A stretch of 64,000 nt of DNA from Mytilus trossulus (lineage: Eukaryota), in the NCBI RefSeq assembly GCF_036588685.1, contig NC_086379.1, forward strand, positions 36,394,001 through 36,458,000. Direction: 5' to 3'. Positions within the stretch are counted from its first letter, which is position 1. The number at the start of each line of letters is the position of its first letter. The notes under the pieces were generated by a model that did not search any database, was not told where the DNA came from, and saw only the letters and a program-made list of their open reading frames with translations. A program made the position numbers and the translations under genes. Positions 4,640 through 63,815 of the stretch are shown in pieces.

Positions 4640-4643
4640 TTAA

Positions 4644-8672: not shown

Positions 8673-8763
8673 ATAAAAGAAGAGTTATTTAGTACTTGTG
8701 GTTTTTTTTTATGAGGACTTATTAGTCTTTTGTATTTATTTGGCTTTTTAACTATTTTGATCT

Positions 8764-8808
8764 GAGCGTCACTGATGAGTCTTATGTAGACGAAACGCGC
8801 GTCTGGCT
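8764..8808 (+). ncRNA. Type I hammerhead ribozyme (partial retrozyme copy, about 8725-8835)
   Basis: GCGTCA-CTGATGA-GTCT(TATGT)AGAC-GAAA-C(GCGC)G-TC^TGGC; intact core, predicted cleavage after 8803. Confidence 0.85.
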
Positions 8809-29153: not shown

Positions 29154-30599
29154 TGCTGTCGTTTGGATGTTGGAGGTTGTTATCTACTCAACTTTATACC
29201 TAAAATGATGTATCAGGTAATTAGGATAATTTACAAGAAAACTCTGGGCTAGTATTTTTTTTGTCTGATATCAACAAATGCCTACCCTTATTTTATAAAC
29301 CTATTCCTTTTTTTTAATCTGCAGAAATTTCGGAACGTCTATTCACTGAATGTAGAGAAAAATCAGAATTGTTTGTTTTTATATTTATAATGATAATCAT
29401 AAAAAACAGATTTGGATAGTAGTGCATTACTTCTGCAAAGTTTATTCAGTTTACTAAACCAGGTTCAGTTCATAAGATTTTCAAGACTTTTGAAATGACT
29501 AAATGAAGTGCAATCTATTTTTTTTGCAGCCGACCCACATATAACAGTTAACTCACCATTTCTTCGTCTTTTTAAATTACCCTTATCTTTATTCCTAAAA
29601 AGCTATAAATATTTAGACATGTTGGAGTCTGAGTTAAGTATTAACCAAAATTGATACAAGAAACCGCAGTTTTTTGCTTTTATTCATTGTGTGTGTGCAG
29701 CGCGGCTGTTAGCAACACTTGTGTCCCTTTGAATTATTCTAGCTGTTCAGCTTTTATATTCGGTTTTGGTTTTCAAATATGTTGGTCTAGACCAAGTTTG
29801 AAAAAAGTATTAACAAAAAAACAATACACCAATGTTAATTTAAAAAAAGAGCAATCCATCTTTTTGCGTATTAAAAATAGAGTTTTCTTTTAATGAGATT
29901 GATTACTAGTGAATATAAAATAACGAAAATATCACAAATCATCAGGACACCATTTTAATTGATCTTGAGGGTATAGGATTTGAGGTTACGAAATCTGCAT
30001 GGGTTATGGTACTACTATCCGAGGTCCTTTACTGTGTTATATAAAGAATAAAAAAAACACTATTAAGTTGTGGAACATTTGATACCCCCTCCCTTGATTC
30101 CATCGACAGTCATATGAAACATGTACGCACTGGTTACTTTCATAATTGAAGAAATAACTCATTAAATAAAAAAAATAGATAATATAAATAAAAACAATTA
30201 CGTTAACATTATATAGTATGGTAACATTCCCTGTGCATAAATAATCATTCTCAGTGTACCATTATCAGTTGTAAATATTCAGTACGATATGACTTCATTG
30301 TATTATGAATATTGTTAAAACAATAAATGAATCATTTTGAAAGCTTTCACATTTACACATTACATGAATTATAGATAATTCATACCAAAGTAAGTATTAT
30401 ACAAATGTGGTGGATTACCAAAAATATGGAATAACATGGGCAGGAATACATAATATGACCCAACATTTTTAAAGGAAGAGTTACAACTGTTAAATGTTCA
30501 AAGATACCAGGCTTATGATTTTTTGCGGCAGACGTTAGTGGCATCTACATAAGAATTATCAGTGATGCTCAAATAAAAACATTTTGGAAGCTAAATCCA

Positions 30600-30920
30600 A
30601 TACGTTCCTATAACGCTCCTGTATAAAGTCATACTCATCTGAATTCAGGAACAAGTCGACAATAAGTTGACCAAAGTTGGATTCCATTGGAAGACCAATT
30701 GTTTGTTTTTTAAATACGTCTCCTTTACGTAAAACATATGTTGTCAATCAAGAAATCAGGCATATGGATAATGTGTCAGTTTCAGGAAATTTTTACTTGG
30801 TTCAGAGTGTTTGTTAACAAAAGTACGATGTATCTGACGCAAGATACTTGTATTGTCTTTGATCATCCTTTTTATGAAGCAAAGCAGGACCATCATTTCA
30901 AATTGTCTTTTAGTGTGGAA
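30600..30920 (-). pseudogene. Penelope-like element RT fragment
   Basis: QTIGLPMESNFGQLIVDLFLNSDEYDFIQ resembles the PLE RT motif QxxGIPMGxxxAPxxADLFL; homologous to the region near 63400-63620. Confidence 0.7.
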
Positions 30921-34457: not shown

Positions 34458-37244
34458 ATGTCGACAATGCCGTTCTTCATTTTACTTTGCTTGTTTCACG
34501 TCGGACTAACGTGCCAGATAATAATTACTGGAAACAATACCGTAAGTTGTTGCACTGAACTGGAGAGGAAGGTTACAGAGCTCGGGACAAAAATCCAAAA
34601 CAATGCATTGAAGACTGAGGTTGAGGAGTTAAAAAATCGTACTGAGGTTATAGAAAATCAAAATAAAGGTAAGTAAAATATGGGCATAATTATTACACTT
34701 ATTTGAAGTCATTGGATACTATTTTAATCAAATGAGGAGTGTCTGATCCTTTTCCGAATAAAAGTAATGTAGGCCTCTAAACTATTCATTACAATGATTT
34801 ATTTGACCAAAATGACCGTTCAACATAGAAAAAATGACAAAAGGATATAATTTATTTCGAAAAATGGGAAATTTTGTATACCGTTATTTACAATTAGACC
34901 ATATCAATACAACTCAAAACAGATGTGCTGACTACACTCTGAGAGACAAACTCCACCAGCAGTGGCAAAAATTATTGGTTTTGACTAAACGCATCATTTG
35001 ATAACCATTTTGTTTACAAAAGATAAATATGACAAAAATGTAAATATTCTTCTATAAGAATCTGAGGGTAGAATTTATTTTCATCGGTATCTTTTGATAA
35101 CCACACAGAAAATAACGAATTTTGTTTTAAACCAAGCAGCCTTGGAGATAAAGGTTAGAGAGTTTGAGCGAAAAGTCAAAAGCAATGCTTTGATGGCAAA
35201 GGTTGATGAACCGAAGGAAAGTACTGACGTGAAACAAATTTGGAATAAAGGTGAGTAAAGTATGAGCATAATTTTAAATTAAGTTGAAGGCATTTAATAC
35301 ACATGTACTAATGTTATAACATACGGATTTTCCCCTAATAAATAGTAATGTTAGTCATTTTGAATACTAGTTATAATGTTCTATCTGACCAAACTGCACA
35401 TTAAAAGACGTGAATAACAGCTTTGTCTCTAAAGACTTGTCACTTTCAACATCATTTAAGGTTGCCTTAGGTTGTAACTTACTTATATTATCTAATAATG
35501 TTAAGCATATCATATATATGAGTGAGATTTAATGGATTTTTCTTTTTTTTTTTAAAGTGTTTTTCAAAAATACTACTTTTTAAACCTTCTGAGTGAATGT
35601 ATTTCAACATGTGTAGAATTAATATGAGAAAAACAGAACACTGTATTTTTCTAAACCAGTAGATATAGACAAAATATTGACTATTTATTCCTTTTCATTT
35701 GAGTACTGAACTTAATGTTAATTGATACATACCTACATTGTTAAATAGGATCGTGTGGTAAGAAGAATCTAGCGTTACATAAGACATGTAGACAAAGTTC
35801 ATATCACGAACACCATAAATGTGATAAGGCTGTCGATGGAGACCTCAGTAACTTTATACACACACAAATTACAATGAAAAATGGTACTTGGCACGGTGAA
35901 AGTTATCCGTATTTCTGGGTTGATCTGAACAACAGTTGTTTAATCAAACTAATCAAAATATACAACAGGAAAGAATGTTGTGGTAAGATTTCTATTAAAT
36001 ACAATTAAAGGATATTTATGTTATTTTATACAATATTAAACCAATTAGGAGAAATTTATATTCATGTTTGAGTGTGCATTTTTATAAATATGTAGGATCC
36101 TTTACTATAGATAATTTAGCTGATCTGTAACAATAACATCTTCATGCCTTATATATCATGTACTGTAGTACGCCGCTAGATTAAAACTGACGTGGAAAGG
36201 TAACACATGCCCACCGATAGCTCTTTTTATGAGAGCCCAGGTGGTCGTGTGGTCTAGCGGGACGGCTGCAGTGCAGGCGATTTGGTGTCACGATATCACA
36301 GTAGCATGGGTTCGAATCCCGGCGAGGGAAGAACCAAAAATTTGCGAAAGCAAATTTACAGATCTAACATTGTTGGGTTGATGTTTAGACGAGTTATATA
36401 TATTTATATATATATAAACGAGTCTAAATTGAAAACTATATATATAAATGCTTTCAAGTTTCATATTAATTACCTCTTGTTTTGATTAACAAGAATATTA
36501 AATCTCAATTTTACCTTAGCCATATTTGCCATAACATTGGACTTTGAGGTCTTCGATGCTTTCCAACTAAGTACTTTTTTGGTTTTATAATCGTTTTGAT
36601 ATGAGCGTCACTGATGAGTCTTATGTAGATGAAACGCGCGTCTAACGTATTGAATTATAAACCTGGTACCTTTGATAACTGTTTACTGTCCTATTCCTTA
36701 CTTGTTACAGGATATTTAAAGAAAAAACTGGTGGGTTAAACAGTTTTTTTCAAACAAATAAAATTGAGAATGAAAATGGGGAATGCATCAAAGAGACAAC
36801 ACGTCGACCACAGAGTAAAAAAAAAACACAAGTTAGCAAATACATACTTACTTTATTTATAAATCACTTAAAATACATTAAGAAAAAATCATAAAATGTT
36901 TCACATTTAGAATCAACAGAACTATTTTACGAATCCATAAATAAAATCGTAATAAGTAATCACACAATCATGTTATTCTTTAATGGAGCAATACTTCAAT
37001 GGTTTGTGTAGTTTACGTTTATTTTGTAGGCGATAGACTCCGCAATGTGGAAGTTACTATTGGACATTCATTATCTAATATGAAGTTATGTGGTTTCTAT
37101 AAAGGTCCAGCTGCAGACGGAGAAATTGTAAACATATATTGCAAAGTACCAATGGTAGCACGTTACGTCAAGGTGATGCTTAAGGAAAATAAAATAGAAG
37201 AAACAGTGATTAATTTTGCTGAAGTCGAAGTATTCGCTAAATAA
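34458..37244 (+). CDS. F-type lectin 2: secreted; exons 34458-34668, (35140-35250 extra coiled-coil exon), 35749-35982, 37030-37244
   Basis: Paralogous to lectin 1 exon by exon: MSTMPFFILLCLFHVGLTC leader, coiled coil, NLALHKTCRQSS...AVDG...HT...PYFWVDL...YNRKECCGDRL...EVEVF. Phase-1 GT-AG introns; AATAAA at the stop. Confidence 0.92.
36232..36400 (+). mobile_element. tRNA-derived SINE-like repeat
   Basis: Pol III A-box TGGTCGTGTGG and B-box GGTTCGAATCC with extended spacing, followed by a non-tRNA body and (TA)n. Confidence 0.65.
36603..36648 (+). ncRNA. Type I hammerhead ribozyme in last intron of lectin 2 (retrozyme remnant about 36510-36682)
   Basis: GCGTCA-CTGATGA-GTCT..AGAT-GAAA-CGCGCG-TC^TAACGT; core intact, stem I weakened. 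Confidence 0.7.
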
Positions 37245-37699: not shown

Positions 37700-38060
37700 T
37701 GGTGGTGGACCGTTAGTCTCCGAGGGTATCACCAGCCCAGCAGCCAGTACTTGGGTGCTTCGGTACTGGCATGAAAATACGGATTTTTATGTGTGGTTAA
37801 AATTTGCTGTTACCAAATTTTAGAAATTATTATAAATTAAGGAATGTATCTCCCTCATGCAAAGATCTGATTCTTTTCACGAATTTGGCTCTACTTTTTA
37901 GACCTTTTTGATTATAGCTCTTCATCTTGTATATGAGTATCACTGAAGAGACATATATTGTCGAAATGCGTATCTGGTGCAGGAAAATTGGTACCGTTAA
38001 TGTTATTTCTACCACTGGGTCGATGCCTTTGCTGGTGGATTGTTAGTCCACGAGGATATT
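37700..38060 (+). mobile_element. Second-family retrozyme unit with hammerhead at 37935-37980
   Basis: GTATCA-CTGAAGA-GACA(TATAT)TGTC-GAAA-T(GCGT)A-TC^TGGTGC; the GGTGGA..CCGAGGGTATC module appears at both ends, i.e. one full permuted unit. Duplicated at 39767-40050 (core 39928-39973). Confidence 0.8.
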
Positions 38061-38497
38061 AAGCGACCAACTATTAATCTATTCGAGGAAAACAATTAAA
38101 TTATTTGTTTTCCATAATGTGAATTCGGCACAAAGGAAAATCAACAGGATTTATTCAGCTCTAATTCGTTAACAGACTCCGTCGCCACATATAGGGTAAG
38201 AGTTGTTTCGTCACAATCTCTTGACTGTTAATGACGTCTTAAACTAAATCGGATAATCCAATGGATTCTTTATGTGTTCTGCTTGATTATTTGGTCTTAG
38301 ATGCATGATTTTTTTGGGTTGGTATTGACTTTGAACTAGCTGTCAGTAACTGCGAGTACACCCAGATCTGCACTCAATGCCTTTTTGTTATTGGCACTGG
38401 CTACGGTTACATGGAAATGAAACAATAATAAAATTATTATTGCTATATTGTTACATTGGAGACTAAATGCCGGAATGCATGGTTTGGTAAGGACCGG

Positions 38498-41400
38498 TGT
38501 CATATGGTATTTTGAACCCCCTAAAAATTGAACCCGGGTTCAAAATACCATGCGATAAAATGACCCCGGGGTCATGCGAGTACTCCCAGATCTGCACTCA
38601 ATGCCTTTTTGTAAAGTAAAATTTTCAAAATATCTTTTCCAGTATGTTAAATACATACAAACTACTTGTTGGAGTATAATAACTATGTTAAGAAGTTTAA
38701 ATAGCTAGAATTTTTGAAATTCAAGGTCTATAGTAGGGGTTCAAAATACCGCAGGGGGGTCAAAATACCATGGATATATTTTTTTTCAAAATGTCTTTTC
38801 CAGCATGTTAAATACATACAAACTACTTATAGGAGTATTATTACTATGTTAAGGAGTTAGAAAAACATGATTTTTTGAAATTTAAGGTCTATGGTAGGGG
38901 GTTCAATTTACCGCAGGGGGGTCAAAATACCATGGAAATTATTTTTTTTCAAAATATCTTTTCCAGCATGTTAAAAACATACAAACTACTTATAGGAGTA
39001 TTATTACTATTCAAAGGAGTCAGAATAACATGAATTTTTGAAATTTAAGGTCTATGGTAGGGGGTTCAATATACCGCAGGGGGGGGGGGTCAAAATACCA
39101 TGGCTAAGTAAAATTTTCAAAATATCTTTTTCCTTTTTATCTAACTCCTTAACATAGTTATTATACTCTGATAAGTAGTTTGTATGTATTTCACATACTG
39201 GAAAAGATATTTTGATAATTTTATTTTGCAATGGTATTTTGACCCCCTGCGGTATATTGAACCCCCTCCCATAGACCTTAAAGTTCAAAAATTCTTGCTA
39301 TTCTAACTCTGTAACATAGTTGTAATACTCTAATTTGTAGTTTGAATGCATTTAACTTGCTTGAAAAGATATTTTGAAGAAAAAAAAATCCATTGTATTT
39401 TGACCCCTCCCCCTTCCATGGTATATTGAACCCCATCCTATAGATCTTCAATTTAACAAAATCCACCTATTCTCAATCCCTTAAATAGTAATAATACTCC
39501 AATTAGTAGTTTGTATTCATGTATTTAAAACTGGGAAAGATATATTGAAAAAAAATAATTTCCATGGTATTTTGACCCCACTGCGGTATATTGAACCCCC
39601 TACTTTAGACCTTTCATTTTAAAAGATCCAGATATTCTTAATCCTTAACATAGTTATAATACTCCAATAAGTAGTTTGTATGCATTAAACATGCTGGAAT
39701 AGATATTTTGAAGAACCAAAAAATGGTATTTTGACCCCACTGCGGTATATTGAACCCCCTACTATATTTGCTGTTACCAAATTTTAGAAATTATTATAAA
39801 TTAAGGAATGTATCTCCCTCATGCAAAGATCTGATTCTTTTCACGAATTTGGCTCTACTTTTTAGACCTTTTTGATTATAGCTCTTCATCTTGTATATAA
39901 GTTTTGGATTTCAAATATTTTGGCCACGAGTATCACTGAAGAGACATATATTGTCGAAATGCGTATCTGGTGCAGGAAAATTGGTACCGTTAATGTTATT
40001 TCTACCACTGGGTCGATGCCTTTGCTGGTGGATTGTTAGTCCACGAGGATATTAAGCGACCAACTATTAATCTATTCGAGGAAAACAATTAAATTATTTG
40101 TTTTCCATAATGTGAATTCGGAACAAAGGAAAATCATCAGGATTTATTCAGCTCTAATTCGTTAACAGACTCCGTCGCCACATATAGGGTAAGAGTTGTT
40201 TCGTCACAATCTCTTGACTGTTAATGACGTCTTAAACTAAATCGGATAATCCAATGGATTCTTTATGTGTTCTGCTTGATTATTTGGTCTTAGATGCATG
40301 ATTTTTTTTGGTTGGTATTGACTTTGAACTAGCTGTCAGTAACTGCGAGTACACCCAGATCTGCACTCAATGCCTTTTTGTTATTGGCACTGGCTACGGT
40401 TACATGGAAATGAAACAATAATAAAATTATTATTAATAAATGGCTAAGTAAAATGTTCAAAATATCTTTTTCCTTTTTATCTAACTCCTTAACATAGTTA
40501 TTATACTCTGATAAGTAGTTTGTATGTATTTCACATACTGGAAAAGATATTTTGATAATTTTATTTTGCAATGGTATTTTGACCCCCTGCGGTATATTGA
40601 ACCCCCTCCCATAGACCTTAAAGTTCAAAAATTCTTGCTATTCTAACTCTGTAACATAGTTGTAATACTCTAATTTGTAGTTTGAATGCATTTAACTTGC
40701 TTGAAAAGATATTTTGAAGAAAAAAAATTCCATTGTATTTTGACCCCTCCCCCTTCCATGGTATATTGAACCCCATCCTATAGATCTTCAATTTAACAAA
40801 ATCCACCTATTCTCAATCCCTTAAATAGTAATAATACTCCAATTAGTAGTTTGTATTCATGTATTTAAAACTGGGAAAGATATATTGAAAAAAAATAATT
40901 TCCATGGTATTTTGACCCCACTGCGGTATATTGAACCCCCCTACTTTAGACCTTTAATTTTAAAAGATCCAGATATTCTTAATCCTTAACATAGTTATAA
41001 TACTCCAATAAGTAGTTTGTATGCATTAAACATGCTGGAATAGATATTTTGAAGAACAAAAAAATGGTATTTTGACCCCACTGCGGTATATTGAACCCCC
41101 TACTATAGAACTTGAATTTCAAAAATTCAAGCTATTCTAACTCCTTAACATAGTTATTATACTCCAACAAGAAGTTTGTGTGTATTTCACATACTGGAAA
41201 AGATATTCTGATAATTATACTTAGCCATGGTATTTTGACCCCCCTGCGGTATATTGAACCCCCTACTATAGACCTTGAATTTCAAAAGTTCAAGCTATTC
41301 TAACTCCTTCACAAAGTTAAAATACTCCAATAAGTAGTTTGTATGTATTAAGCATACTGGAAAAGATATTTTGCTAAATTTTACATAGCCATGGTATTTT

Positions 41401-42811
41401 GACCCCCCTGCGGTATATTGAACCCCCTACCATAGACCTTAAAGTTCAAAAACTCTTGCTTTTCTAACTCCGTAACATAGTTGTTATACTCTAATTTGTA
41501 GTTTGAATGCATTTAACTTGCTTGAAAAGATATTTGAAGAAAACAAAATTCCATTGTATTTTTACCCCCTCCCCCTTCCATGGTATATTGAACCCCCTCC
41601 TATAGACCGTCAATTTAACAAAATCCACCTATTCTCAATCCTTAACATAGTAACAATACTCCAAGAAGTAGTTGGTATGCATGTATCTAACTTGCTTGAA
41701 AAGATATTTTGAAAAAAAAATTAAATTCCGTGGTATTTTGACCCCCTGCGGTATATTGAACCCCCTACTAGAGTATAGACCTTGAATTTAAAAATTCAAG
41801 CTGCTCTTACTCCTTAACATAGAAATTATACTCTTATAAGTAATTTGTATGTTTTTCACATACCGGAAAAGACATTTTGATAATTTTATTTTGCCATGGT
41901 AATTGACCCCCTGCGGTATATTGAACCCCCTACCATAGACCTTAAAGTTGAAAAATTCTTGCTATTCTAACTCTGTAACATAGTTGTAATACTCCAATTT
42001 GTAGTTTGAAAGCATTTTTAAACTTGCTTGAAAAGATATTTTGAAGAAGAAAAAAAAAATCATTGTATTTTGACCCCCTCCCCCTTCCATGGTATATTGA
42101 ACCCCCTCCTATGGACCTTGAATTTTAAAAATCCAAGTTTTTCTAACTCCTTAACATAGTTTTGATACTTCAATAAGTAGTTTGTATGTATTTAACATGC
42201 TGGAAATTTTACTTAGTCATGTTATTTTGAACCCCCTATTATACATAAAGACCTTTAATGTTAAAATATCTTGCTACTGTAACTCCTTTACATATTTATT
42301 ATACTCCAATAAGTAGTTTGTATTCATTTTATTAGCTTGAAAAGATGTTATGAAAATTTTACTTTTTAGATTAACTGAGCAATGGTAATTTGACCCCCTC
42401 CCCCTTTTTTACCATGGAGAATTGAAACTTAAGTCTACCATTCTATATGAATATTTTGAATTTCAAAGAATGTAAGTGTCCAAGCTACATGGTCTATTTA
42501 TAATGCTTTAAGAAGTTTTTTGAATGAAATGTTGGTTAAGACTTCAGAGCACTTATACCAAGCAAATATTTTTCTTTTGACCAATCATTAAAAATTGACC
42601 TCCCCCTCTTGTATCAATGATTTTTAATATCTGATTAGCTTTTATATAATGTTAATTGTTTAATTAATCATCTAGAATGAAAAAAACTGGGGGTTCAATT
42701 TACCAGGGGGGGAGGGGGGGGTCAATTTACCATGGGTGGGGGTTCCATTTACCATAGCGGTATTTTGACCCCGGGTTCATTTTACCATGGGGTTCAAAAT
42801 ACCATATGAAA
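38498..42811. mobile_element. Ginger-like fold-back element filled with about 120-bp tandem repeats
   Basis: CCGG|TGTCATATGGTATTTTGAACCCC...GGGGTTCAAAATACCATATGAAA|CCGG (TGT..ACA-type ends, 4-bp CCGG TSD). Internal units contain ATGGTATTTTGACCCC-TGCGGTATATTGAACCCC and flip orientation near 39120. Confidence 0.75.
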
Positions 42812-44025
42812 CCGGTTTAATTACGAATGTAACAATAATTATTGAGGCTACGGTTACATTGCGTTATTGTTACATGAAAAAAGCAATGTACGATGGGACT
42901 AATAATATGTACTAAATAATAAAAGTTGAGGACATTTATAACATACATTTATAACATACATTTATAACATACAATTTATTTACTGTAATTTTTTATTTAC
43001 AATGACAATTTCTACAAATCCAGTAAGTTGTTTTCATGTCCGACACATTTTTTATGAACGAAATTACGTCCTCCACGGATACGTGTACATACATAATTTC
43101 TTAGTATTTAAGTTACAGTTAGCAAAGTTATAAAGCTGTATGAAATGTATGTCTTGATATTGTTTAAGTTTCGTTTAAAACGCATCCCAAGTTTTTTTTT
43201 CTCACCATAAACAAAATTGGTCTAAAGTACAATGACAGTAATAAGAGTAAGTGCGCAGTTAAATACTTTAAAAAGGTGAAACCATTGAACTATATTGTTC
43301 GCCTTTGACAGTCACACTCCTAATCTTGAGTAGTATCTTTAAGAACATCAAAAGACAAAACCATTAATACGCAGTAAAACTATTCAAGTTGTACACTTGT
43401 TGAATAATAATATTTAATTATTTATCAGTATTAAATTACAAGTATTGTTTAGTACATATAAAAGAATGAAGCAATACAATTATAAAAGATTTAAGTTTAA
43501 TCAATCTAGCGTACATTAATGTTTTTCATGTAACAATAACGTAATGTAACCGTAGCCTCAGTAATTATTGTTACATTTGTAATTAATCGGTTCCTCATCC
43601 AACTTTGCATTCCGGCAATAAGTCTCCAATGTTACAATAATATTTTTATTATTGTTGTAGTAGTAGTTGGGTCTCAAAGTTCAAGTCCAATAAATTCTTA
43701 TTGTTTATTGTTATAAAACGCATGAATGTATAATACACAATACAATAGACTGCATAGTGTCGCAGGTACCCTCGTACTTGGTTCGAAGTTTACGTGAAAA
43801 CTACAAAGAAAAATGAAAACAACCTTAGTAAAACAGTCAAAATAAACAGAAATTATATTCGAATGACATATGAATCAAGCACAATATCCGCACAATACAA
43901 AAACACAACAAATTTACCTCTTTGGGCCAATTACACACTGATCTAGTTCGCATATTTCGTTCGTTTACTGACAAGGGAGATAACAATGTATAATCCTGTT
44001 ATTCGTATGGCTCCTCATCAGGGAA

Positions 44026-47000
44026 TTATTCGGTCTCCTGGAGTAAGACCATCTTATGGATTGGTCGTTCTAGCTCGGTGAGTTTTGACTTACGGACGCC
44101 TCTACGATCCAAATTCGTTGATCCTACTGCGAGTCTTACTTTTCGGACTAAATTATCATCATCAACGAATGTTTTGCAAATTCGACCTAGTTTCCACATG
44201 TTTCGCACTAAATTGTCATCCTTAATCATAACAATGTCACCAACAGATAAATTTCGCTTCGGAGCGATCCATTTTTGCCTAGACTGAATATTTGAAAGAA
44301 ACTCTTTCCTCCAACGACTCCAAAATTCATTTGCAAGAAACTGAACCCGTCTCCAGCGCTTTCTGGAATATACGTCGTTTTTCATGAAGTTTCCAGGTGG
44401 TGGTAGAAAAACTTTACTTTTCATAGTCAATAAATGATTTGGTGTCAACGGTTCAACGGAAAGCGGATCGTTCAGGTTTTCCAACGTAAGTGGTCGACTA
44501 TTCACTATAGCTGTTGCTTCAGACATTAAAGTTCTCAACGACTCATCATCAAGCTGAGTTCCTAGCTGACATAGTAAAGTTGAAAGAATGTTTCGGACAG
44601 AACGTATCTGTCTTTCCCAAACGCCACCCATGTGACTAGCAGACGGAACGTTCATCTTAAATTGTACGAAATCCAATTTGTTCAAGTAGATATTGACGGA
44701 TTCGGTCAAAATCCAATTCAGACATTGCCTTAGTATATTCTCCTTCGGCTCCAACAAAGTTAGTTCCTTGATCACACCGAAGATGCCTTACGGGTCCGCG
44801 GATAGACACAAATATTCTCAATGCATTAATGAAAGAGCTCGTATCTAAAGAGTTAGCAGTTTCGATATGAATTGATCTCGATGACAAACAGGTAAATAAA
44901 ACTCCATACCGCTTAAGTTCATTGCGGCCCTCCTTAATTAACCAAGGTCCAAACAGATCAACACCACAGTACGTGAATGGAGGCATAGTCTCTAGTCGGT
45001 CTACCGGTAAATCAGCCATTTTCTGTACCTGAGTTTGGCTACGCAATTTTCGACATGTAACACATTTAGACAAAAGGTTCGAAACAGCAGAACTACATCC
45101 GATTATCCAATATCCATGTGAACGTATTGTGTTCGTAGTAATTCCACGTCCTTGGTGAAATGATTTTTCGTGAAAATAGCGCATGATAAGCTCGGTCACG
45201 TGAGAATGTCTAGGTAATATAATAGGATGCTTCAAATCAATGCTCAGATCAGCACGTCGGATGCGGCCACCAACTCGGATGATGCCGTCCTGGTCGAGAA
45301 AGGGGTCAAGTTTATACAAAGACGATTTCTTTTTCATAGTATTGTTTCGCACTTTAGCTGAGTCGTTGGCTTCAAACGGTCCTTCAGAATCAAATGAACG
45401 CAATATGAGTAATTCTTCCTTGAAGAAAGTGTCTTGAACCCTTTTGACAATTTCAAGTTCAGCTTGTCGCATGTCTTCCATGTTAACGGATAAACAGGTT
45501 CCCTTCGGACGTTTTGCTAGCAACGCATTTCTCAGGTTCAAGCAAAGAGCTGTCGCATGTTTAGCTCTGTTCCAATCTGAAAAGTATTCTAAACGTTCAA
45601 GTATGGACGCAGGAGGAGGTAAACAAGTACTTGTAGACATTACTTTAACTTTTCTGACTTCCGGGTCATTCAATAACGGTTTAGACGTATCCGATAATTC
45701 CTTTCTGACTACGTGTTCCGCATTCCATAAGAAATCTGGTCCCGTAAACCACTTTGATTCTCTTAATTTGATCGGTGTAGCTCCACGAGAAGCAATGTCG
45801 GCTGGGTTTTCGGCAGAACTGACATAATTCCACTGAAATGGTTCGGTGTTGTCGCGAATCTGTTGTACTCTGTTAGCCACATGAAAACGCCTGGAATCAT
45901 TCGCAATATAACCTAGTACTACGTTACTATCGGTCCAGAAATACTCAGTGACATTTTTATCGGAATACTCAAGTTCATCTCTAAAAATTGCACTGACTTT
46001 CACGGAGATTACTGCAGCCGTAAGCTCTAACCTGGGAATCGTAATGGGCTTTAACGGAACTACTCGAGATTTACCAATAACCAGAGCACAATGTACTTGT
46101 TGTTTAAAGTTGAAAAGGCGAACGTACGAACACTGACCGTAACCATTTGAACTAGCATCTGAAAAATGATGAAATTCTATGAATTTTACTTCGCCAAAGT
46201 CAACCGGTTTGAAGCAACGATTGATTTTCAATAATTCAAGGTCTATTAAGTCTTGCTTCCACCTTTCCCATTTGTTCTGGATATCTTCCGGTAACGGGGT
46301 ATCCCAATCGGTTTGATCCTTACATAAATCTTGCAAGAGCTGTTTCCCAACAAGAATGATGGGTGAGATAATACCTAGCGGATCATATACTGCGCTTAAT
46401 GTAGACAGCATTCCACGCCTTGTAGGCGGCTTGTTGTTGAGCGTGATACGAAATTGAAACACATCTAATTCAATACACTATTCAATTCCTAATGTCTTTG
46501 TCGTTGGAAGTTCATCATGTGATAAGTTTAAATTCAACTCTTTGGCACGATCCTTTTCTGGTATGTGCGCTAAAACATCCTTAGAATTTGACAAAAATTT
46601 GTGCAACCGAAGACCACGCTTATTGCACATTTCTACACTACCATGTATAAGGTTCACTGCTTCTGTAACGTTTGACACAGATTTAAGACCATCATCAACG
46701 TAAAAATCACGTCTAATAAAGTTCGATACTTTGGAACCAAAATCGGCTTCATAATCATTAGCAAGTTGTTTAAGTCCGAAATTGGCACATCCAGGGGATG
46801 ATGCGGCCCCAAAAAAATGGACGTTCATCCTGTATTCGCACGGTTCTTTCGAAAGATCTTCATAATTGTCCCACCACAAAAATCGTAAATAATCTTGGTG
46901 TTCAGTTCTCACTTTGAACTGTAAAAACATTTGTTCAATATCGCAGACTACTGCAATTGGTTCTTGACGAAATCTACAAAGCACTCCTACCAACGAGTTC

Positions 47001-50000
47001 GTTAATAGTTATCAAAGGTACCAGGATTATAATTTGATACGCCAGACGCGCGTTTCGTCTACATAAGACTCATCAGTGACGCTCAGATCAAAACAGTTAA
47101 AAAGCCAAACAAATACAAAGTTGAAGAGCATTGAGGACCCAAAAATTCCAAAAAGTTGTGCCAAATACGGCTAAGGTAATCTACTCCTGGGCGTAAGAAA
47201 ATCCTTAGTTTTTCGAAAAATTCAAAGTTTTGTAAACAGAAAATTTATAAAAATGACCATATAATTGATATTCATGTCAACACCCGAAGTGCTGACTACT
47301 GGGCTGGTGATACCCTCGGGGACGAAACGTCCACCAGCAGTGGCATCGACCCAGTGGTGTAAATAGTTATCAAAGGTACCAGGATTATAATTTGATACGC
47401 CAGACGCGCGTTTCGTCTACATAAGACTCATCAGTGACGCTCCGATCAAAACAGTTAAAAAGCCAAACAAATACAAAGTTGAAGAGCATTGAGGACCCAA
47501 AAATTCCAAAAAGTTGTGCCAAATACGGCTAAGGTAATCTACTCCTGGGCGTAAGAAAATCCTTAGTTTTTCGAAAAATTCAAAGTTTTGTAAACAGAAA
47601 ATTTATAAAAATGACCATATAATTGATAGTCATGTCAACACCCGAAGTGCTGACTACTGGGCTGGTGATACCCTCGGGGACGAAACGTCCACCAGCAGTG
47701 GCATCGACCTAGTGGTGTAAATAGTTATCAAAGGTACCAGGATTATAATTTGATACGCCAGACGCGCGTTTCGTCTACATAAGACTCATCAGTGACGCTC
47801 AGATCAAAACAGTTAAAAAGCCAAACAAATACAAAGTTGAAGAGCATTGAGGACCCACAAATTCCAAAAAGTTGTGCCAAATACGGCTAAGGTAATCTAC
47901 TCCTGGGCGTAAGAAAATCCTTAGTTTTTCGAAAAATTCAAAGTTTTGTAAACAGAAAATTTATAAAAATGACCATATAATTGATATTCATGTCAACACC
48001 CGAAGTGCTGACTACTGGGCTGGTGATACCCTCGGGGACGAAACGTCCACCAGCAGTGGCATCGACCCAGTGGTGTAAATAGTTAAGTCTGGGCCTTGCA
48101 GCAAGTAATCGTTTAGTGATTCACCTTTGTATCTAGAACTACAATCAAACACAACACGGACTTTTTCGGGCTTCTGAGGATGATATACTCCGTGATGTGG
48201 TATGTACCAAACATGTCCTTCGTTATCGGATTGAGACGGTTTAACTTTCTCCGCAAATTCCTTTGTTATTAAGTCATCCATACTCTTAAAATAGTCATTT
48301 CGGTATCGAGCATCATTGCGTAAACGCTTTCGAAGATGATTGAATCTCTGAATGGCTTGAGACTTGTTGTTCGGTAATATCGGTTCGGATCCTTTAAAGG
48401 TCAAGGGCATTTCATAATGTCCATCATTTACTCTGATTCCGCTTTCAAGAATGTTCAAAAAACGTTTGTCATCAAATGACATAGACTGTTTGTCATGAGT
48501 TCGTTCGGAAAAATCGAGTTCCATCATTCGCGCTACTTCAACGGGACTTACTAATTTTGTAAAATTTCTAATAGTAAATAATACATGGCTTTCAAACGCT
48601 ATCATTCTGTGAGAATGTGTAGTTAATGCATTATCAATGCAGCTCGGATCCACAATACCAACTATACCCCATCCGAGGTCTGTTTTCTGTGCGTAAGGTC
48701 CATCATCAGTTGTCGGAATCACCTCTCTAGGAGTCAATGCACGGGCGCAATTATAACCTATAAGTAGTCCGAATTCGCAATCACTTACTGGCATCAACTG
48801 ACTGGCAATCTTCTCTAACTGCGGCCATTTTCTCGCCATATCACAAGTAGGTATATGTGCTCTATTTGCCGGTAAGATGTCGCGGGCAAATGTAGACGGT
48901 AACGTTATCTTCATGTCGCTATCGTAAGCCCTTACTATTTATCCATCTATCTTACAGCTATCGACTATTGAATTCTGTGAATGCATGGTTGATAATGACA
49001 GCTTCACGTCGGCACCAGAAAGTCCAATAGTTTGACGTGTATTGTCCAAATTGAACGTAGTATCAGACTGAGTATCTAAGAGTGCGTACACTAGTATTTC
49101 ATGTTGTTGGTTATCAATATGAGAGCGATAAACAGGAACAATCATCGAGCTTTTTCCACATGACTCGGTTATGCTCATTAAAACCGCACCAGTTTGAGAC
49201 TTATAAAGTTCCTTTTCCTCATTACAAGGTGTAGGTTGTTTTAAATTGTTCGGAAATTGTTTTACTACATCTCCATGAAAGGCTGTCGGATGTCGTTTTG
49301 TGCAAATGCTGCACGTTGCGCGTTTGTTACACTGTTTCGATAAATGTCCAGAGCCTAAACAAGCAAAGCACAACCCTGTTCTCTTAGCAAATTCTTTACG
49401 CTCTTGTACAGATTTTGCAAGGTAGTTTCTACATGAATCAAGTATGTGTCCAGCCTTGTGACAGAACAAACAATTCTTATTAGCACCGGAGTTACTTTCT
49501 TTGGTCCTATCATAACTAGTCGACTTTGTCTCCGTTGCAAATGCATTTCTGCGTGGTGTATCACGGTCATTTTTAACACTTCGAAAGTTTGTGTCCGTAT
49601 TTCGTGGTGTACTTTCTGTTTTAAGAGAGTTGAGAGAAGTAACAGGATCGTTCGCAATCGTTGATTCTCGTTCAATAAACACAGAAAAAGTCTGAAATGA
49701 GGGAAATGTATGATGATCACTTTTATGTTGAGCGACAATTCGTCCCCATCGTGTAACTATCCAGTCGGGAAATTTTGATAAAAGTTTTCGGTTCTCACGA
49801 TCATCATTAAGAACGTTCAGATTCTTGATCGTTTTCATTGCGGAAAGACACTGTTTAATATAATCTGAAAATTTTCTCAATCCTTAGCTATCACGAGACG
49901 CTATCTTAGGCCACTTTTCTAGTCGGTCACGAAAAGCATTACCAACGATAAACGGGTCACCATACCTTTGGTCTAACAGTTTTTTAGCATCAAAATAAGA

Positions 50001-51245
50001 GTCATCTGTTGCAATAAGGAAAAAGTTTTCGATTACTTCACGAACGGAGTCTCCAACATACCTACGTAAGTAATGGATCTGCTCTAAAGGTGGTATGTTC
50101 CTTCGCTCAATAAGGGTCTCAAAAGCTACTTTCCATGACGCATATTTTAATGGATCGCCATTAAATATCGGAGGTTCAGGCAGAGGAAGTCTATTCAAGT
50201 TAACTTGGTCAGCAAAAGATTTGGCTAAGTCAGTAACCACATCTGAGCTTATTGTTTTTGACATAATTGGCATTTCGGTTTTCGGTAAATCCACATGCAC
50301 AGAATCGGTTTGTACGTGATCCATCGCTCTGAAACTACTTGTTTCTCTTTGAATCGGAACAAATTCATTTACTTCCGGATTTAGACCTGAGGAGCTAACA
50401 AAAGGTGCGACAACTGGTTGATTTTGGTTTATCGCATAGTCAACATTTGTATCACTAGTAAAAGGCACAGAAGACGATAAAATGTTAGGTACACTTGAGT
50501 TTTTGTTTTGATCATGTGAAGCACTTACAGTCTTTAAGAAGATTGTCAATATATCGGCTTGTGGTAAATATTTTTTTGCATCATCAAGCACTGAGCCACC
50601 CTGACTTACTCCTTCGAGTATTTCTAACTTTACTTCTGCAGTTTCTAACTCACGCCTAGTTTGAATTTTATCAAGTTCTAATTTTGCTTTCGATTCAGCT
50701 TCAATATATTTCAATTTTGTTTTTAGTTCAGCGGCTCTTGCAGCAGTTTCAGATAATTTAGACGCATTTGATATTCGAGACGAAACATGTGACCTTTCAG
50801 ACACCAAACGGTTCGATCGACTAGAACGCCTAGATGACCTTTCACTTTTTATCTCATCAATACATTGTATGCGTTTAGCAATCTCTTTTAAAATAGTAGC
50901 AGTATCTGTTTCACACTGTTCAAATTTCTGAGAAATATCAGTTCCGATTTCGCGAGCTGATTGAGAATGTTCCGATGAAGAGCCTACTTCGCTTAGCAAA
51001 CGACATAAATGTTTTTAAATGTCCTCAATTTGACTCATACATTTTACTAATGAGTCTCTAGTGGCACGTTTTTCTGCTAAATCATCACTGTCACTCAAGA
51101 GAATACTTAACTTATTGTGTTTCGAGTGCCAAGCTGATATAGCTTTTTTTAAATTTTGCTGAAGAGTGTCTAATTGCCAGAATAAACCCTTTTCAGTCAT
51201 TTTGCGGTGTCTCGTAACGCGTGGTTCCTCACAAGGACTAGACAT
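44026..51245 (-). pseudogene. BEL/Pao gag-pol polyprotein interrupted by stops, frameshifts and a 1.08-kb insertion
   Basis: Three Zn knuckles (CLFCHKAGH, CFACLGSGH, CSICTKRH), protease ALLDTQSD, RT YVDD, RNase H FSDAS/PRLEL, integrase H..H..CVTC plus GVDLFGP, CDQGTNF and GGVWER. Broken into seven ORFs. Confidence 0.95.
47004..48085 (-). mobile_element. Tandem trimer (3 x 358 bp) of a hammerhead-ribozyme retrozyme inserted in the BEL/Pao RT region
   Basis: Unit starts at 47004, 47362, 47720 (and terminal 48078). Each unit has, on -, GAGCGTCA-CTGATGA-GTCT(TATGT)AGAC-GAAA-CGCGCG-TC^TGGCGT with cleavage at 47045, 47403 and 47761. Removing it restores LLQGPDLTNSLVGVL; GTTAA is present on both sides. 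Confidence 0.95.
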
Positions 51246-52077
51246 GAATAATTATAATACATTATGATATATACAGAATCAAAATGCACATAATTCAAAT
51301 AAATCAACATTCAAAACCTATGCATCAATATGACAAAATAATAAGCAATAAAAAATGACAAATTCACGTAGGCAAAATATCAATATGACTTGCTATGACA
51401 AGTTTATAAAAAATGCAATAATATTCAAAGGTATTACCAAAATTCATCAAACTACACAAAAATCTTAAAATGCATCAATGGCGCAATGAAATTTCAAGTT
51501 TGTCAATTATGCTAAATCAATAGTCATATTAATAATATCAATTTATTTCTGTAAATAATAGAAGGCTATGTCCCAGTCTTGACAGCTTCCACTGTTCTTC
51601 TTCTGTTGTAACCGCAATTTCTATGAAGAATAAATGTAACAAACACTTTGGATTCGTTTATGATTGTTTTTGTACAAATGTTCACTGTTACGTAAGTTAT
51701 GTGTCAATAGCCACTGCCAAATCACACGTGTTAAATTAACGCATCACATCAGGTATGAAACTGTGTAGAGAGTTTTCACTGTAGTAGTAGTTGGGTCTCA
51801 AAGTTCAAGTCCAAATAATTTCTTATTGTTTATTGTTATAAAACGCATGAATGTATAATACACAATACAATAGACTGCATAGTGTCGCAGGTACCCTCGT
51901 ACTTGGTTCGAAGTTTACGTGAAAACTACAAAGAAAAATGAAAACAACCTTAGTAAAACAGTCAAAATAAACAGAAATTATATTCGAATGACATATGAAT
52001 CAAGCACAATATCCGCGCAATACAAAAACAAAACAAATTTACCTCTTTGGGCCACTGATCTAGTTCGTATATTTCGT

Positions 52078-52785
52078 TAGTCTCGATCATCCAGACGCTC
52101 CATATCCTATATGTAGAGTCTGGATTCAATTGCATTGAATAATTGTTAAGTTGGGGCGTGACAAAATATGCAAATGAGCTAGTTTTAATTTTTCGGAAAG
52201 TTTCAAGATTTATCTTCTATTCATGTTAACACTAGATAAAACCGAACAGAGGAAATGGACTATCAATGGACGTGGCATCCAAATCAGCTGAGTCTATCTC
52301 AAGTTTATACATTTCTCACTCAGTTGTGCCAAACACATCTCTATGTGTTTCTTGTTCAACAGTTGGTTCAAGAAAGTATCTCATATTATCTAAAAGTGGC
52401 TCTGTTGGTTCCGCATTCGAAAACTGTTGTAAATTTTATGAAACTAATCTACAGTGCAAAGAGAACTTTGGCAGTTACGTTTGTCATCAATGTAAATGGT
52501 ATGTACGAGAGAAGCTCTCCTGTGATAGTGTAGTTCAACTTTTACAGACCCCCAAATTGATAGAATTTCTGATTCCTGTGATTATAGGCGGAGTTTTAGC
52601 TGTAACTTCAGGGTACCCAAAGATGGGTGTGTTTATAATAATATCATCCAATCCCGTAATAAGAAAAAATTGTTGGGAATCCAACAAGAGGCTCATGAAT
52701 AATTGAATATTTACATCAACTTCAACAATCGCAACCAGACGTTATAGTTCGCAGTAAGAACGATAACTCTGGTGTAACGAGACTA
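52078..52785. mobile_element. Non-autonomous DNA transposon in the 5' LTR (9-bp TSD, TAG..CTA ends; Academ/AcademH-like)
   Basis: ATATTTCGT|TAGTCTCG...CGAGACTA|ATATTTCGT; absent from the other LTR, which has a single ATATTTCGT. Confidence 0.85.
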
Positions 52786-62106: not shown

Positions 62107-62281
62107 TAGTTATCAAAAGTACCAGGATTACAATTTTATACGCCAGACGCGCGTTTCGTCTACATAAGACTCATCAGTGACGCTCATATCAAAATAGTAA
62201 AAAAGCCAAATAAATACAAAGTTGAAGAGCATTGATGACCCAAAATTGCAAAAAGTTGTGCCAAATACGGCTAAGGTTATT
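62107..62281 (-). ncRNA. 5'-truncated retrozyme copy with intact hammerhead (62140-62185)
   Basis: High identity to the first half of the 358-bp unit; perfect core and GCGC loop. Confidence 0.9.
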
Positions 62282-63815
62282 TAAACTTTTCTTTGCGAAC
62301 ACAGGTATTGTTATCATCAACTTCGGCAATATCCTTCAGCATTATTCAGATAATTCAAAAATACCTCCCTATTTTATAGACCAGTCTGTACCTATCATTT
62401 TGTATATCTTCTGGTATACCAAACCAATTGCAACTTCTAGTATATATATTTTTTTATTACAAACACGTGTTGCAGATTCTCAATATTAACGACTTTTAAC
62501 CCTATTAAACCTACTGATTGAACCTGTGCTAGTTCCCCATTCACATATAATCCAGCTGGCCACGTTATAACCGGTAACTTTAAACTTGACAATAACACAA
62601 ATTTGTTATCCAAAATCCTAGAATATCGTAAACCTAAATCCATCAATTAGAATCACAACTTATGTGATTATACCAGGCAATGAGCTAAACACGAAAATGA
62701 AGACGTAAATACCCTTCCTGAATGGATTTAGGCTGTGAGGTAACACAAATAAGAATTAAGAAACTGAATGGGTCTATTAATACCCATGCTACATTTATCT
62801 TTAAAGACCCACATAGTGCTTTTAAAGCACTTGTCCTACCTCCAGGAAAAATATGTTGTTGTCTCCGCAGATAAAGCCCCAAACAACATATTTTTGTGTG
62901 TAAATCACATTATATAAATTTCTTGATAAATGAATAAGATATTTACAATTCACTTGGAAACTCAACATATACCCCCACGACACTCACTAAAAGAAATCCT
63001 GGATAATCATAGGTCTGTGTTCCTTTGGAATTTCGACCAGAGATGGAGACCTGTTTATTCACTGAATTAGATTCACAAATTACATGTGTGTTCTTATGTA
63101 CAATGGTATATTTCTGGGTATTTTTAATGTTCCACGAAACCTCAATCTAAATGATAAACATCAATATGATCAAAAATCAAAGCCGGGCTTCAAATATATT
63201 GTGAAACTACATACTTCTAGAGGTGGCGTTAATCAGATGGAGATACTAAAAAGATCTTTTCAATAACCACTTATCAAAGACACTTTCACCTTGCAATAGC
63301 ATAAACGCATTTGAATTTTCTACACCTGACACAAGTAATCCCCATTCCAAACTGAAAGACAAATTGAAAAAATTGATCCTGCTTTGTTGCATTAAAATGA
63401 ATGGCCAACGTAGATACAAGTATCTTGTCTTAGGGAGAGATACAACCTCATTTGTTAGAAAATCACTCTGATTCAAACAACAGTTTTTTTTTTGATCTGA
63501 CATTATCAAGATTGTTGATTTATCGATTGCAGGACGTTTTTTCAACAAATGATCGGCATTCCCATGGAGAAAACTGTGTCTCTCTTCTTGCCGACTAGTT
63601 CCTTTATTCATATAAGGTCGATTTCACTTAGAAACTTATTAGGTAGAAAGAAAAGAAGATAACAGTATCTTTAAATCCTAAATCTTTACCTTCGGCTATG
63701 TAGATAATGTGCTCTCACTAAATAATTCAAAATGTGGTTACTTTATATGTTAAACGAACCTATCACATCGAACTGGAGATAAAGGAAACAACAGTTACTG
63801 TTGAGTCTTATCATA
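62282..63815 (+). pseudogene. Decayed Penelope-like element ORF (N-terminal region + RT)
   Basis: Frameshifted segments IPPYF.DQSVPII, YNPAGHVITG, VVVSADKAPN (PLE DKG/DKA motif), GVNQM.ILK, QMIGIPM, F.YVDNVLSLNN (YxDD-derived). Confidence 0.75.

What the first reader, a model, noticed from the sequence alone, without database searches (positions are those of the whole stretch)
47004..48085. Tandem hammerhead-ribozyme retrozyme trimer inserted in sense into a BEL/Pao pol gene: a likely circRNA-producing parasite of a retrotransposon
Seen: three 358-bp units differing at only about 4 positions by eye, each with a perfect type I hammerhead on the - strand, exactly 358 nt apart. Stem III is minimal with a palindromic GCGC loop. 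The trimer splits the conserved QGPDLTNSL motif and has the same orientation as the LTR element. Established: metazoan non-LTR retrozymes, described from Mytilus among other animals, are non-coding tandem hammerhead repeats processed to monomeric linear and circular RNAs; minimal-stem-III hammerheads cleave as dimers. Inference: read-through from the LTR promoter would cut the BEL RNA three times and release two 358-nt monomers, so the insertion both disables the host element and borrows its promoter. The class is known; this nested arrangement is the unusual part.
Basis: partly seen in the sequence, partly recalled or inferred. Interest (0 to 1): 0.9.

Follow-up and report, generated by a model that had tools for sequence, protein, structure and literature searches.

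The report
Mussel retrozyme copy inside a BEL retrotransposon
This is one ordinary copy of the already described mussel hammerhead "retrozyme" repeat, which is present in thousands of places in this genome and happened to land inside one decaying BEL/Pao retrotransposon; nothing shows that the two work together.

Summary
Window 47004-48085 carries three 358-bp units that differ at 4 columns. Each has a type I hammerhead on the - strand (Rfam RF00163, 33.0 bits, E 6e-6, one bit under the gathering score). The array splits QGPDLT|NSL in the RT of a BEL/Pao element of the same orientation.

The repeat is the known Mytilus-type non-LTR retrozyme of Cervera & de la Pena 2020. It gives at least 3177 first-look candidates across the chromosomes and abundant strand-biased RNA.

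Three paralogous BEL copies have the empty site CCCAGACTTAACGAACTCG. So this is a single later insertion with a 5-bp TTAAC duplication, and the composite has not spread.

In four RNA runs no read joins BEL to retrozyme. The sparse BEL reads have the opposite orientation and carry mismatches. This BEL copy also has other in-frame stops.

22 arrays end within the same 8-nt stretch, 39-45 nt past the cleavage site, and their 5' starts are scattered. That is a target-primed, Penelope-like insertion signature. The scan noted the shared 3' boundary separately (s1-818567).

Verdict: a known class and an incidental nesting, of low interest.

The parts
47006..48081 (-). Inserted retrozyme DNA, 1076 nt = 3.006 units. 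It runs from unit position 5 of the first unit to position 6 of a fourth. The exact ends are ambiguous by a few nt because the unit's own TAAC/TT overlaps the duplicated target.
   Evidence: Filled site compared with three empty paralogous sites; TRF.
47728..48085 (-). Unit A (5'-most). It differs from the majority at column 228.
47370..47727 (-). Unit B (middle). It differs at columns 18, 99 and 285.
47012..47369 (-). Unit C (3'-most), identical to the majority sequence.
47755..47798 (-). Type I hammerhead of unit A; cleavage 3' of C at 47761.
   Evidence: RF00163, 33.0 bits, E 6.2e-6; triplet position.
47397..47440 (-). Type I hammerhead of unit B; cleavage 3' of C at 47403.
47039..47082 (-). 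Type I hammerhead of unit C; cleavage 3' of C at 47045.
47004..47044 (-). 3' tail of the array, from the last cleavage site to the family's common 3' boundary (...CCTGGTACCTTTGATAACTA[TT]).
   Evidence: 22 arrays end at unit positions 363-370.
48082..48086 (-). Upstream copy of the duplicated target TTAAC.
   Evidence: Empty sites read CCCAGACTTAACGAACTCG; coordinates.
47001..47005 (-). Downstream copy of the duplicated target TTAAC.
47276..47355 (-). Stable hairpin domain just past the 3' boundary (unit positions 15-94, shown here for unit C). By eye, its sequence blocks also occur in the published sister-family clone.
   Evidence: Fold of unit positions 1-108: -40.3 kcal/mol, z -3.6, 0 of 200 shuffles as stable; published Mg353 sequence.
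43656..52081 (-). Host BEL/Pao LTR retrotransposon. The 5' LTR is 51780-52081 and the 3' LTR is 43656-43964. The gag-pol frame is interrupted by the retrozyme and by further stops.

Best explanation
This is one copy of the abundant, already described mussel non-LTR retrozyme: a non-coding 358-nt unit with a type I hammerhead that is transcribed, self-cleaved and ligated into a small circular RNA. It inserted as a three-unit array into the RT-coding region of one resident BEL/Pao copy, after that element had integrated. Shown: the insertion carries a 5-bp TTAAC target duplication and has the family's constant 3' end. Inferred: reverse transcription was primed by the nicked target at ...UAACUAUU, 39-45 nt downstream of the cleavage site. 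It therefore ran on a circular or multimeric RNA, went about three times round, and was probably done by a Penelope-like element enzyme. The sense orientation and the BEL host are incidental. The insertion truncates the RT of a copy that also carries other lesions. The abundant retrozyme RNA in the animal comes from the family as a whole, not detectably from this locus or from the BEL promoter.
For: Family identity: a 358-bp tandem unit, 40% GC, with no ORF of 80 aa or more lying wholly inside the array. The hammerhead matches RF00163. Cervera & de la Pena 2020 report about 5000 type I hammerheads in 350-390-bp repeats in M. galloprovincialis, with abundant circRNA and self-cleavage at about 0.1 per min. 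Their clone Mg353 shares the hammerhead and several sequence blocks by eye.

Abundance: 3177 first-look candidates. The full-length unit matches scored are 94-100% identical and lie on most large contigs. There are 7 pieces in this window.

Single late insertion: three paralogous BEL copies (96-99% identical) have the uninterrupted site CCCAGACTTAACGAACTCG. The units differ by 1-4 of 358 positions, against 5 mismatches plus 2 indels in about 302 nt between the LTRs.

Insertion signature: 22 arrays of 0.3 to 6.8 units end at unit positions 363-370 and start at scattered positions. Short, variable duplications of 5-8 bp are visible in several.

Expression: depth is 500-2000 in one orientation against 90-190 in the other in three stranded runs. 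Between 94 and 1174 reads per run cross the unit junction.

No read-through: in the retrozyme's dominant orientation, depth falls to 0-1.5 in the first full BEL bin. The BEL reads present are in the opposite orientation.

Hammerhead under constraint: 59 of 63 full units keep a perfect core, and hammerhead columns vary 4 times less than the rest.
Against: The RNA runs are from other individuals, which may lack this insertion, and only 6-18% of each run was read. Rare LTR-driven chimeric transcripts therefore cannot be excluded. The library strand convention is assumed, not verified on a known gene. The enzyme that made the insertion is not identified. The sampled GIY-YIG elements carry no hammerhead of their own. 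The only sequence link to a Penelope-like element is a 27/29-nt module that is internal, not terminal, in that element. The three units could also have arisen from fewer units by unequal crossing-over after insertion.
Confidence: 0.85

Rival explanations
1. One reading: the nesting is functional. The retrozyme exploits the BEL LTR promoter, so sense read-through is cut three times and yields two 358-nt monomers that circularise. In this view the retrozyme is a parasite of the retrotransposon and may even use its RT.
For: Same orientation and three intact hammerheads. The LTRs are still about 98% alike at aligned bases. None of 18 other sampled arrays lies in a recognisable retroelement ORF, so the arrangement is not the common case.
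Against: The site is empty in all three other BEL copies and the composite has not spread. There are no junction reads and no BEL coverage in the retrozyme's dominant orientation in four RNA runs. Arrays with no LTR element in their 1.5-kb flanks exist in large numbers and the family is highly expressed. The insertion anatomy is non-LTR or Penelope-like: 5' truncation, a fixed 3' end, and none of the LTR, PBS or PPT features that Cervera & de la Pena 2020 report as absent from animal retrozymes.
Confidence: 0.06
2. Satellite-type origin: a single unit or a dimer inserted, or was captured by repair, and grew to three units by unequal crossing-over or replication slippage. On this view the array size says nothing about rolling-circle reverse transcription.
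For: Units in tandem at 99% identity are what unequal exchange gives. Very long arrays of more than 9 units exist on C1.
Against: Arrays across the genome have non-integer lengths, with a 5'-truncated first unit and the same 3' end. That points to the insertion event, not later exchange. Here both ends sit at TAAC microhomology with a clean 5-bp duplication.
Confidence: 0.06
3. Assembly artefact: the array, or its copy number, was misplaced or miscounted by the assembler in a repeat-rich region.
For: The repeat is very abundant.
Against: Both junctions are precise and show a target duplication that matches the empty paralogous sites. The three units carry four unit-specific differences. Several public runs hold 73-78% of the sampled words of the 1.7-kb stretch including the flanks.
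Confidence: 0.03

Closest known systems
Mytilus galloprovincialis non-LTR retrozymes (Cervera & de la Pena, Nucleic Acids Res 2020, PMC7229834; clone Mg353, hammerhead families A and B)
   Same: Tandem non-coding units of 350-390 bp, low GC, with a type I hammerhead that has a 2-bp helix III and a tetraloop. Thousands of genomic copies and very abundant RNA. By eye, the hammerhead of the published clone differs from this one by one loop-2 base. Blocks such as CCACTGGGTCGATGCCACTGCTGGTGGA and GAGGGTATCACCAGCCCAGTAGTCAGC are shared.
   Different: This unit belongs to the sister sub-family. The roughly 50 nt between the cleavage site and CCACTGGG, which is the 3' tail where insertions end, is unrelated to that of Mg353.
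Penelope-like elements and their non-autonomous derivatives (Craig et al. 2021, PMC8557442; Li, Clavereau & Pollet 2026 preprint, 10.64898/2026.07.22.740005)
   Same: Strong 5' truncation, head-to-tail partial tandems, a constant 3' end and short variable target duplications. A Naiad-type element in this genome (L066) has a 27/29-nt match to the retrozyme's last 29 nt in its pseudo-LTR.
   Different: There is no coding capacity. In the Naiad-type element the shared module is internal, 416 nt before its own 3' end. None of the 30 GIY-YIG loci had a hammerhead of its own by pattern search, and the Rfam scan of 20 of them agreed. The partner is therefore not established.
Newt and axolotl satellite-2 hammerhead repeats
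   Same: Type I hammerhead in a tandem repeat of about 330-350 bp, transcribed to monomeric and circular RNA, with a palindromic helix III region that would allow double-hammerhead pairing.
   Different: The amphibian HHR_Amex1 type has a single base pair in helix III and needs dimers. This one has two base pairs plus a tetraloop, like other invertebrate hammerheads that cleave as single motifs.
Nested transposon insertions in general (an abundant SINE-like element landing in an LTR retrotransposon)
   Same: A single copy-specific insertion with a target duplication, an empty site in paralogous copies, and a host ORF that is interrupted.
   Different: The inserted element carries a self-cleaving ribozyme, so a sense host transcript would be cut. 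This is a consequence of the insertion, not evidence of a function.

Membership tests
Hammerhead ribozyme, type I (Rfam RF00163) | Conserved catalytic core: C3-U-G-A-N-G-A9, G12-A-A14, the A15.1-U16.1 pair and a cleavage triplet NUH | tested here: met
   CUGAUGA, GAAA and GUC are all present in the three copies.
Hammerhead ribozyme, type I (Rfam RF00163) | Three helices around the core, with helix I open (type I topology) | tested here: met
   The full-length model alignment covers positions 1-45. Helix I has 6 pairs, helix II is GUC/GAC extended to GUCU/AGAC, and helix III is AC/GU plus a GCGC loop.
Hammerhead ribozyme, type I (Rfam RF00163) | Score at or above the curated gathering threshold (a curation cut-off, not a biological feature) | tested here: inconclusive
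   33.0 bits against 34; E 6.2e-6 locally and 2.4e-4 for the whole window.
Hammerhead ribozyme, type I (Rfam RF00163) | Self-cleavage at the predicted site | not testable with these tools
   Published for the sister clone Mg353, about 0.1 per min (PMC7229834). The RNA reads show no pile-up of ends at 47761/47760, meaning under a fifth of the depth. That fits mostly circular or uncut RNA.
Metazoan non-LTR retrozyme | Short tandem repeat (150-450 bp) carrying a type I hammerhead in each unit | tested here: met
Metazoan non-LTR retrozyme | Non-coding and low GC | tested here: met
   40% GC. No ORF of 80 aa or more lies wholly inside the array; one BEL frame (48012-48914) runs 74 nt into it before a stop. 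The junctions are plain, with a 5-bp duplication. LTR, PBS and PPT features were not looked for in the unit; their absence from animal retrozymes is taken from PMC7229834.
Metazoan non-LTR retrozyme | Dispersed multicopy family | tested here: met
   3177 first-look candidates; full-length unit matches at 94-100% on most large contigs.
Metazoan non-LTR retrozyme | Abundant RNA of hammerhead polarity, monomeric and circular | tested here: inconclusive
   Abundant strand-biased RNA and junction-spanning reads are shown at family level. Short reads cannot tell a circle from a multimer, and the strand convention is assumed.
BEL/Pao LTR retrotransposon (the host element) | LTRs flanking gag-pol with a Pao-type aspartic protease, RT and integrase | tested here: met
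   LTRs. Peptidase_A17 at 1.5e-45, DUF1759, Integrase_H2C2 and DUF5641. RT motif QGPDLTNSL in the empty copies.
Non-autonomous derivative of a Penelope-like element | 5'-truncated head-to-tail insertions with a constant 3' end | tested here: met
   22 arrays.
Non-autonomous derivative of a Penelope-like element | Sequence homology of the unit to the pseudo-LTR or 3' end of an autonomous element in the same genome | tested here: inconclusive
   Only a 27/29-nt module is shared with a Naiad-type pseudo-LTR: local alignment score 48 against a shuffle maximum of 33. It is internal in that element.

The most novel reading that the evidence does not exclude
The array is a clean footprint of how animal retrozymes move. 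The empty paralogous sites prove a 5-bp duplication. The family-wide 3' end lies 39-45 nt beyond the ribozyme cut, so the template cannot be the cleaved linear monomer. It must be the circle or a multimer, with reverse transcription primed by the nicked target on ...UAACUAUU(U) and running round the circle. A 29-nt module ending at that point is shared with the pseudo-LTR of a Naiad-type Penelope-like element, which would name the enzyme. If so, the start site of retrozyme reverse transcription is mapped to the nucleotide in a mollusc. It would also follow that the two mussel sub-families, which differ in exactly this tail, use different partners.
Probability: 0.35. Interest if true: 0.5.

Novelty: already known. 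Interest (0 to 1): 0.17.

Why it matters
As submitted, it matters little. Retrozymes of this kind, in this kind of animal, were described in 2020, and a nested copy in a dead retrotransposon is what a family of thousands of insertions is expected to produce. The locus is still useful as a worked example. Because the host is itself a repeat, the pre-insertion site can be read from paralogous copies. That gives an unambiguous target duplication and exact insert ends, which is rarely possible for these elements. Together with the constant 3' end seen in 22 arrays, this supports the proposed target-primed, rolling-circle, Penelope-like route of mobilisation.

Tried and rejected
(1) The Rfam search at gathering thresholds found nothing. 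The hammerheads sit one bit under the cut-off and appear only with E-value thresholds.

(2) Folding the whole monomer: -84.1 kcal/mol, z -0.57, no more stable than shuffles. The isolated 54-nt hammerhead does not fold to the hammerhead shape as its minimum-energy structure. Neither result is informative.

(3) No tRNA-like structure that could act as an internal promoter was found by ARAGORN.

(4) Apparent enrichment of retrozyme pieces near GIY-YIG loci (4 of 30 loci). I rejected this after finding 7 retrozyme pieces in the 64-kb window itself, which means the background density is just as high.

(5) Fragments resembling the 3' end of the Naiad-type element lie near 6 of 18 retrozyme arrays, and one is head-to-head with a retrozyme 5' end in L018. 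This is suggestive of twin priming, but it cannot be separated from the general density of these fragments.

(6) No hammerhead belonging to a Penelope-like element was found: a pattern search covered all 30 GIY-YIG loci and an Rfam scan covered 20 of them. The autonomous partner therefore remains unidentified.

(7) The stem-loop said to be shared with a Naiad leader (note s1-829899) was not seen in the L066 family: z +1.15 and -1.9, against -3.6 for the retrozyme.

I did not try another route.

The comparison is by eye.
Full report
OBSERVATION. Tandem Repeats Finder reports one array at 47004-48085, with period 358, 3.0 copies, 99% matches and no indels. The three units differ at four columns in register (18, 99, 228, 285). 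The middle unit carries three of these changes and the 5' unit carries one.

Rfam at gathering thresholds reports nothing in the window. With E-value thresholds, Hammerhead_1 (RF00163) matches full length three times on the - strand, at 47755-47798, 47397-47440 and 47039-47082. Each match scores 33.0 bits against a gathering score of 34, with E 6.2e-6 on the local stretch and 2.4e-4 on the whole window. The catalytic core is intact. The cleavage-site C lies at 47761, 47403 and 47045. Helix III is two base pairs capped by GCGC, inside the palindrome ACGCGCGU.

HOST ELEMENT. The surrounding element is a BEL/Pao LTR retrotransposon on the - strand. Its LTRs lie at 51780-52081 and 43656-43964, with 5 mismatches and 2 indels over about 302 aligned nt. 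The Pfam hits are DUF1759, Peptidase_A17 (1.5e-45), Integrase_H2C2 and DUF5641. The flanks of the array translate to ...LLQGPDLT and NSLVGVLCRFRQEP.... So the array splits the RT and has the same orientation as the element.

WHAT THE REPEAT IS. A search of the window's own genome (1.30 Gb, 541 contigs) with one unit gave 3177 first-look candidates. Only 40 were scored, and the full-length unit matches among them are 94-100% identical on most large contigs. The window itself holds six further pieces, at 8729-8830, 25997-26318, 30498-30603, 36511-36675, 37700-37757 and 62113-62283. Two of them have hammerheads that Rfam detects.

The unit has 40% GC, and no ORF of 80 aa or more lies wholly inside the array. 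This matches the metazoan non-LTR retrozymes of Cervera & de la Pena 2020 (PMC7229834). They report about 5000 type I hammerheads in repeats of 350-390 bp in Mytilus galloprovincialis. They also report circular RNA at high levels in several tissues, co-transcriptional self-cleavage at about 0.1 per min, and circularisation by RtcB ligase.

Their cloned genomic unit Mg353 is printed in the supplement. By eye, its hammerhead differs from the one here by a single loop-2 base, and several long blocks are shared. The stretch between the cleavage site and CCACTGGG is unrelated.

Among 63 full-length genomic units, 59 keep a perfect hammerhead core. Hammerhead columns vary four times less than the rest of the unit.

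IS THE NESTING A RELATIONSHIP? The BEL family is small. The 415 nt upstream of the array find only four other places in the genome. Three of these contain both flanks, and all three read CCCAGACTTAACGAACTCG without interruption. The filled site reads CCCAGAC-TTAAC-[1076 nt]-TTAAC-GAACTCG. This is therefore one insertion into one resident copy, with a 5-bp duplication, and the composite has not transposed.

Pairwise differences between the units (1-4 per 358) are smaller than those between the LTRs. This fits insertion after the BEL element integrated. This BEL copy also has in-frame stops at 49884, 48939 and 46478 and a frame change near 44700, so the retrozyme is not its only lesion. The paralogous copies differ in how many stops they carry, and I make no further use of that.

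Of 18 other sampled arrays, none lies in a recognisable retroelement ORF. Nesting in an LTR element is thus the minority case, as expected from how little of the genome such ORFs occupy.

RNA. I laid four raw RNA-seq runs of the same species label on 47728-52200. That stretch holds one unit, the upstream BEL region and the 5' LTR. In the three stranded runs, depth over the unit is 518-2057 with the first mate on + and 81-189 in the other orientation. Under the usual convention, this means RNA of the - strand, the hammerhead polarity.

Between 94 and 1174 reads per run cross the unit end and re-enter at its start. This fits circles or multimers equally well. No pile-up of molecule ends was reported at the cleavage site, so fewer than a fifth of molecules end there. 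This agrees with the published predominance of circles.

Most reads are only 95-99% alike, so they come from other copies. In the retrozyme's dominant orientation, depth falls to 0-1.5 in the first full BEL bin. Every loose end reported at 48085 continues into another retrozyme unit, not into BEL.

The sparse BEL coverage (0-12) lies almost wholly in the opposite orientation and carries mismatches, and the unstranded run has none. Whatever the library convention, the abundant retrozyme RNA and the BEL-region RNA have opposite polarity. Read-through from the LTR promoter is therefore not seen.

Three limits apply. The runs come from other individuals, only 6-18% of each was read, and the strand convention was not checked on a known gene.

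HOW IT GOT THERE. The sampled arrays run from 0.3 to 6.8 units. All 22 that retain a 3' end stop at unit positions 363-370, that is ...CCTTTGATAACTA followed by zero to six further unit bases, and a few C1 arrays run on beyond their loci. This is 39-45 nt beyond the cleavage site. Their 5' ends are scattered over the unit. Several show short duplications of 5-8 bp.

A constant 3' end with 5' truncation is the signature of target-primed reverse transcription. Partial head-to-tail tandems are typical of Penelope-like elements (Craig et al. 2021, PMC8557442). Because the constant end is not the ribozyme cut, the template must have been circular or multimeric RNA. This is an inference.

At this locus both junctions sit on TAAC microhomology. 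That explains why the insert is almost exactly three units (3.006).

Penelope-like elements were proposed as mobilisers in 2020. A 2026 preprint shows homology between retrozymes and pseudo-LTRs in Xenopus (10.64898/2026.07.22.740005).

SEARCH FOR THE PARTNER. The genome has at least 615 GIY-YIG candidates. None of the 30 sampled loci has a hammerhead of its own by pattern search, and the Rfam scan of 20 of them agrees.

One Naiad-type element, L066, has a GIY-YIG ORF followed by an RT ORF. Its pseudo-LTRs lie at 3961-4790 and 8288-9122. These contain sub-repeats of about 272 nt. The last 29 nt of a sub-repeat match the last 29 nt of the retrozyme at 27 positions (local alignment score 48, against a maximum of 33 in 200 shuffles). 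In that element the module is followed by 416 nt before the ORF and before the element's own end.

The link is therefore real homology of a short module, not proof of partnership.

VERDICT. The class is known and the family is already published for mussels. The nested, sense arrangement is best explained as one incidental insertion among thousands. RNA data give no support for a borrowed promoter.

It does not apply to this 2-bp type.

The most useful by-product is the exact definition of the insert ends and the target duplication from the empty paralogous sites. Combined with the family-wide 3' boundary, this supports a target-primed, rolling-circle route of mobilisation.

Noticed in passing
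window 25997-26318 (+), 62113-62283 (-), 8729-8830 (+), 36511-36675 (+), 30498-30603 (-), 37700-37757 (+): Six further pieces of the same or a related retrozyme lie in the window, all single and 5'-truncated. The copies at 26250-26293 and 62140-62183 still have hammerheads (29.3 and 33.0 bits). The copy at 62113-62283 ends at TAACTA, and the one at 25997-26318 ends at a diverged form of the same boundary (...TCTAACTAT).
   Followed up: partly
window 37800-42400: A large block of tandem repeats of about 160-170 bp (60-99% alike), with higher-order spacings of 1340 and 1993 bp. It lies next to the retrozyme-like piece at 37700. Its nature was not examined.
   Followed up: no
L066 (G000:C4:16014000-16023999) 3319-9141: A Naiad-type Penelope-like element: a GIY-YIG ORF at 4763-6142 followed by an RT ORF at 6146-7921, with pseudo-LTRs at 3961-4790 and 8288-9122. 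The pseudo-LTRs hold sub-repeats of about 272 nt. Each sub-repeat ends in a 29-nt module that matches 27 of the retrozyme's last 29 nt. This sub-repeat gives 1223 first-look candidates in the genome.
   Followed up: partly
L018 2322-2414 (G000:C14:81010743-81014099): A 5'-truncated fragment resembling the 3' end of the Naiad-type element (...GTGATTTTACTTTT) lies head-to-head against the 5'-truncated end of a retrozyme array. This resembles the inverted 5'-truncated copies typical of Penelope-like insertions, but it could also be a secondary insertion.
   Followed up: partly
L039 minus strand, about 456-700 (G000:C10:12724269-12727550): A retrozyme copy with an internal deletion. Unit position 175 is joined directly to the terminal TTTGATAACTATT, so the canonical 3' end is kept although half the unit is missing.
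   Followed up: no
window 48178-52081: The few RNA reads on the BEL element (depth 0-12) lie almost wholly in the orientation opposite to the retrozyme's dominant RNA. Under the usual library convention they are antisense to the BEL ORFs. They carry mismatches, so they probably come from other copies.
   Followed up: no
window 47276-47355 (unit positions 15-94) and its equivalents in the other units: The segment just past the insertion boundary folds into a markedly stable branched hairpin (-40.3 kcal/mol, z -3.6). By eye, its sequence blocks are also present in the published sister-family clone. It may be a protein-binding or priming module.
   Followed up: partly
window 47753-47800 (RNA reads): About 100 reads per run match only the hammerhead core and diverge on both sides. 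Their loose ends match the tail of the published clone Mg353. So the sister retrozyme family, with nearly the same ribozyme, is co-expressed.
   Followed up: partly
window 28488-28793: A fragment 87% identical to the 416-nt segment that precedes the ORF in the Naiad-type element L066.
   Followed up: no
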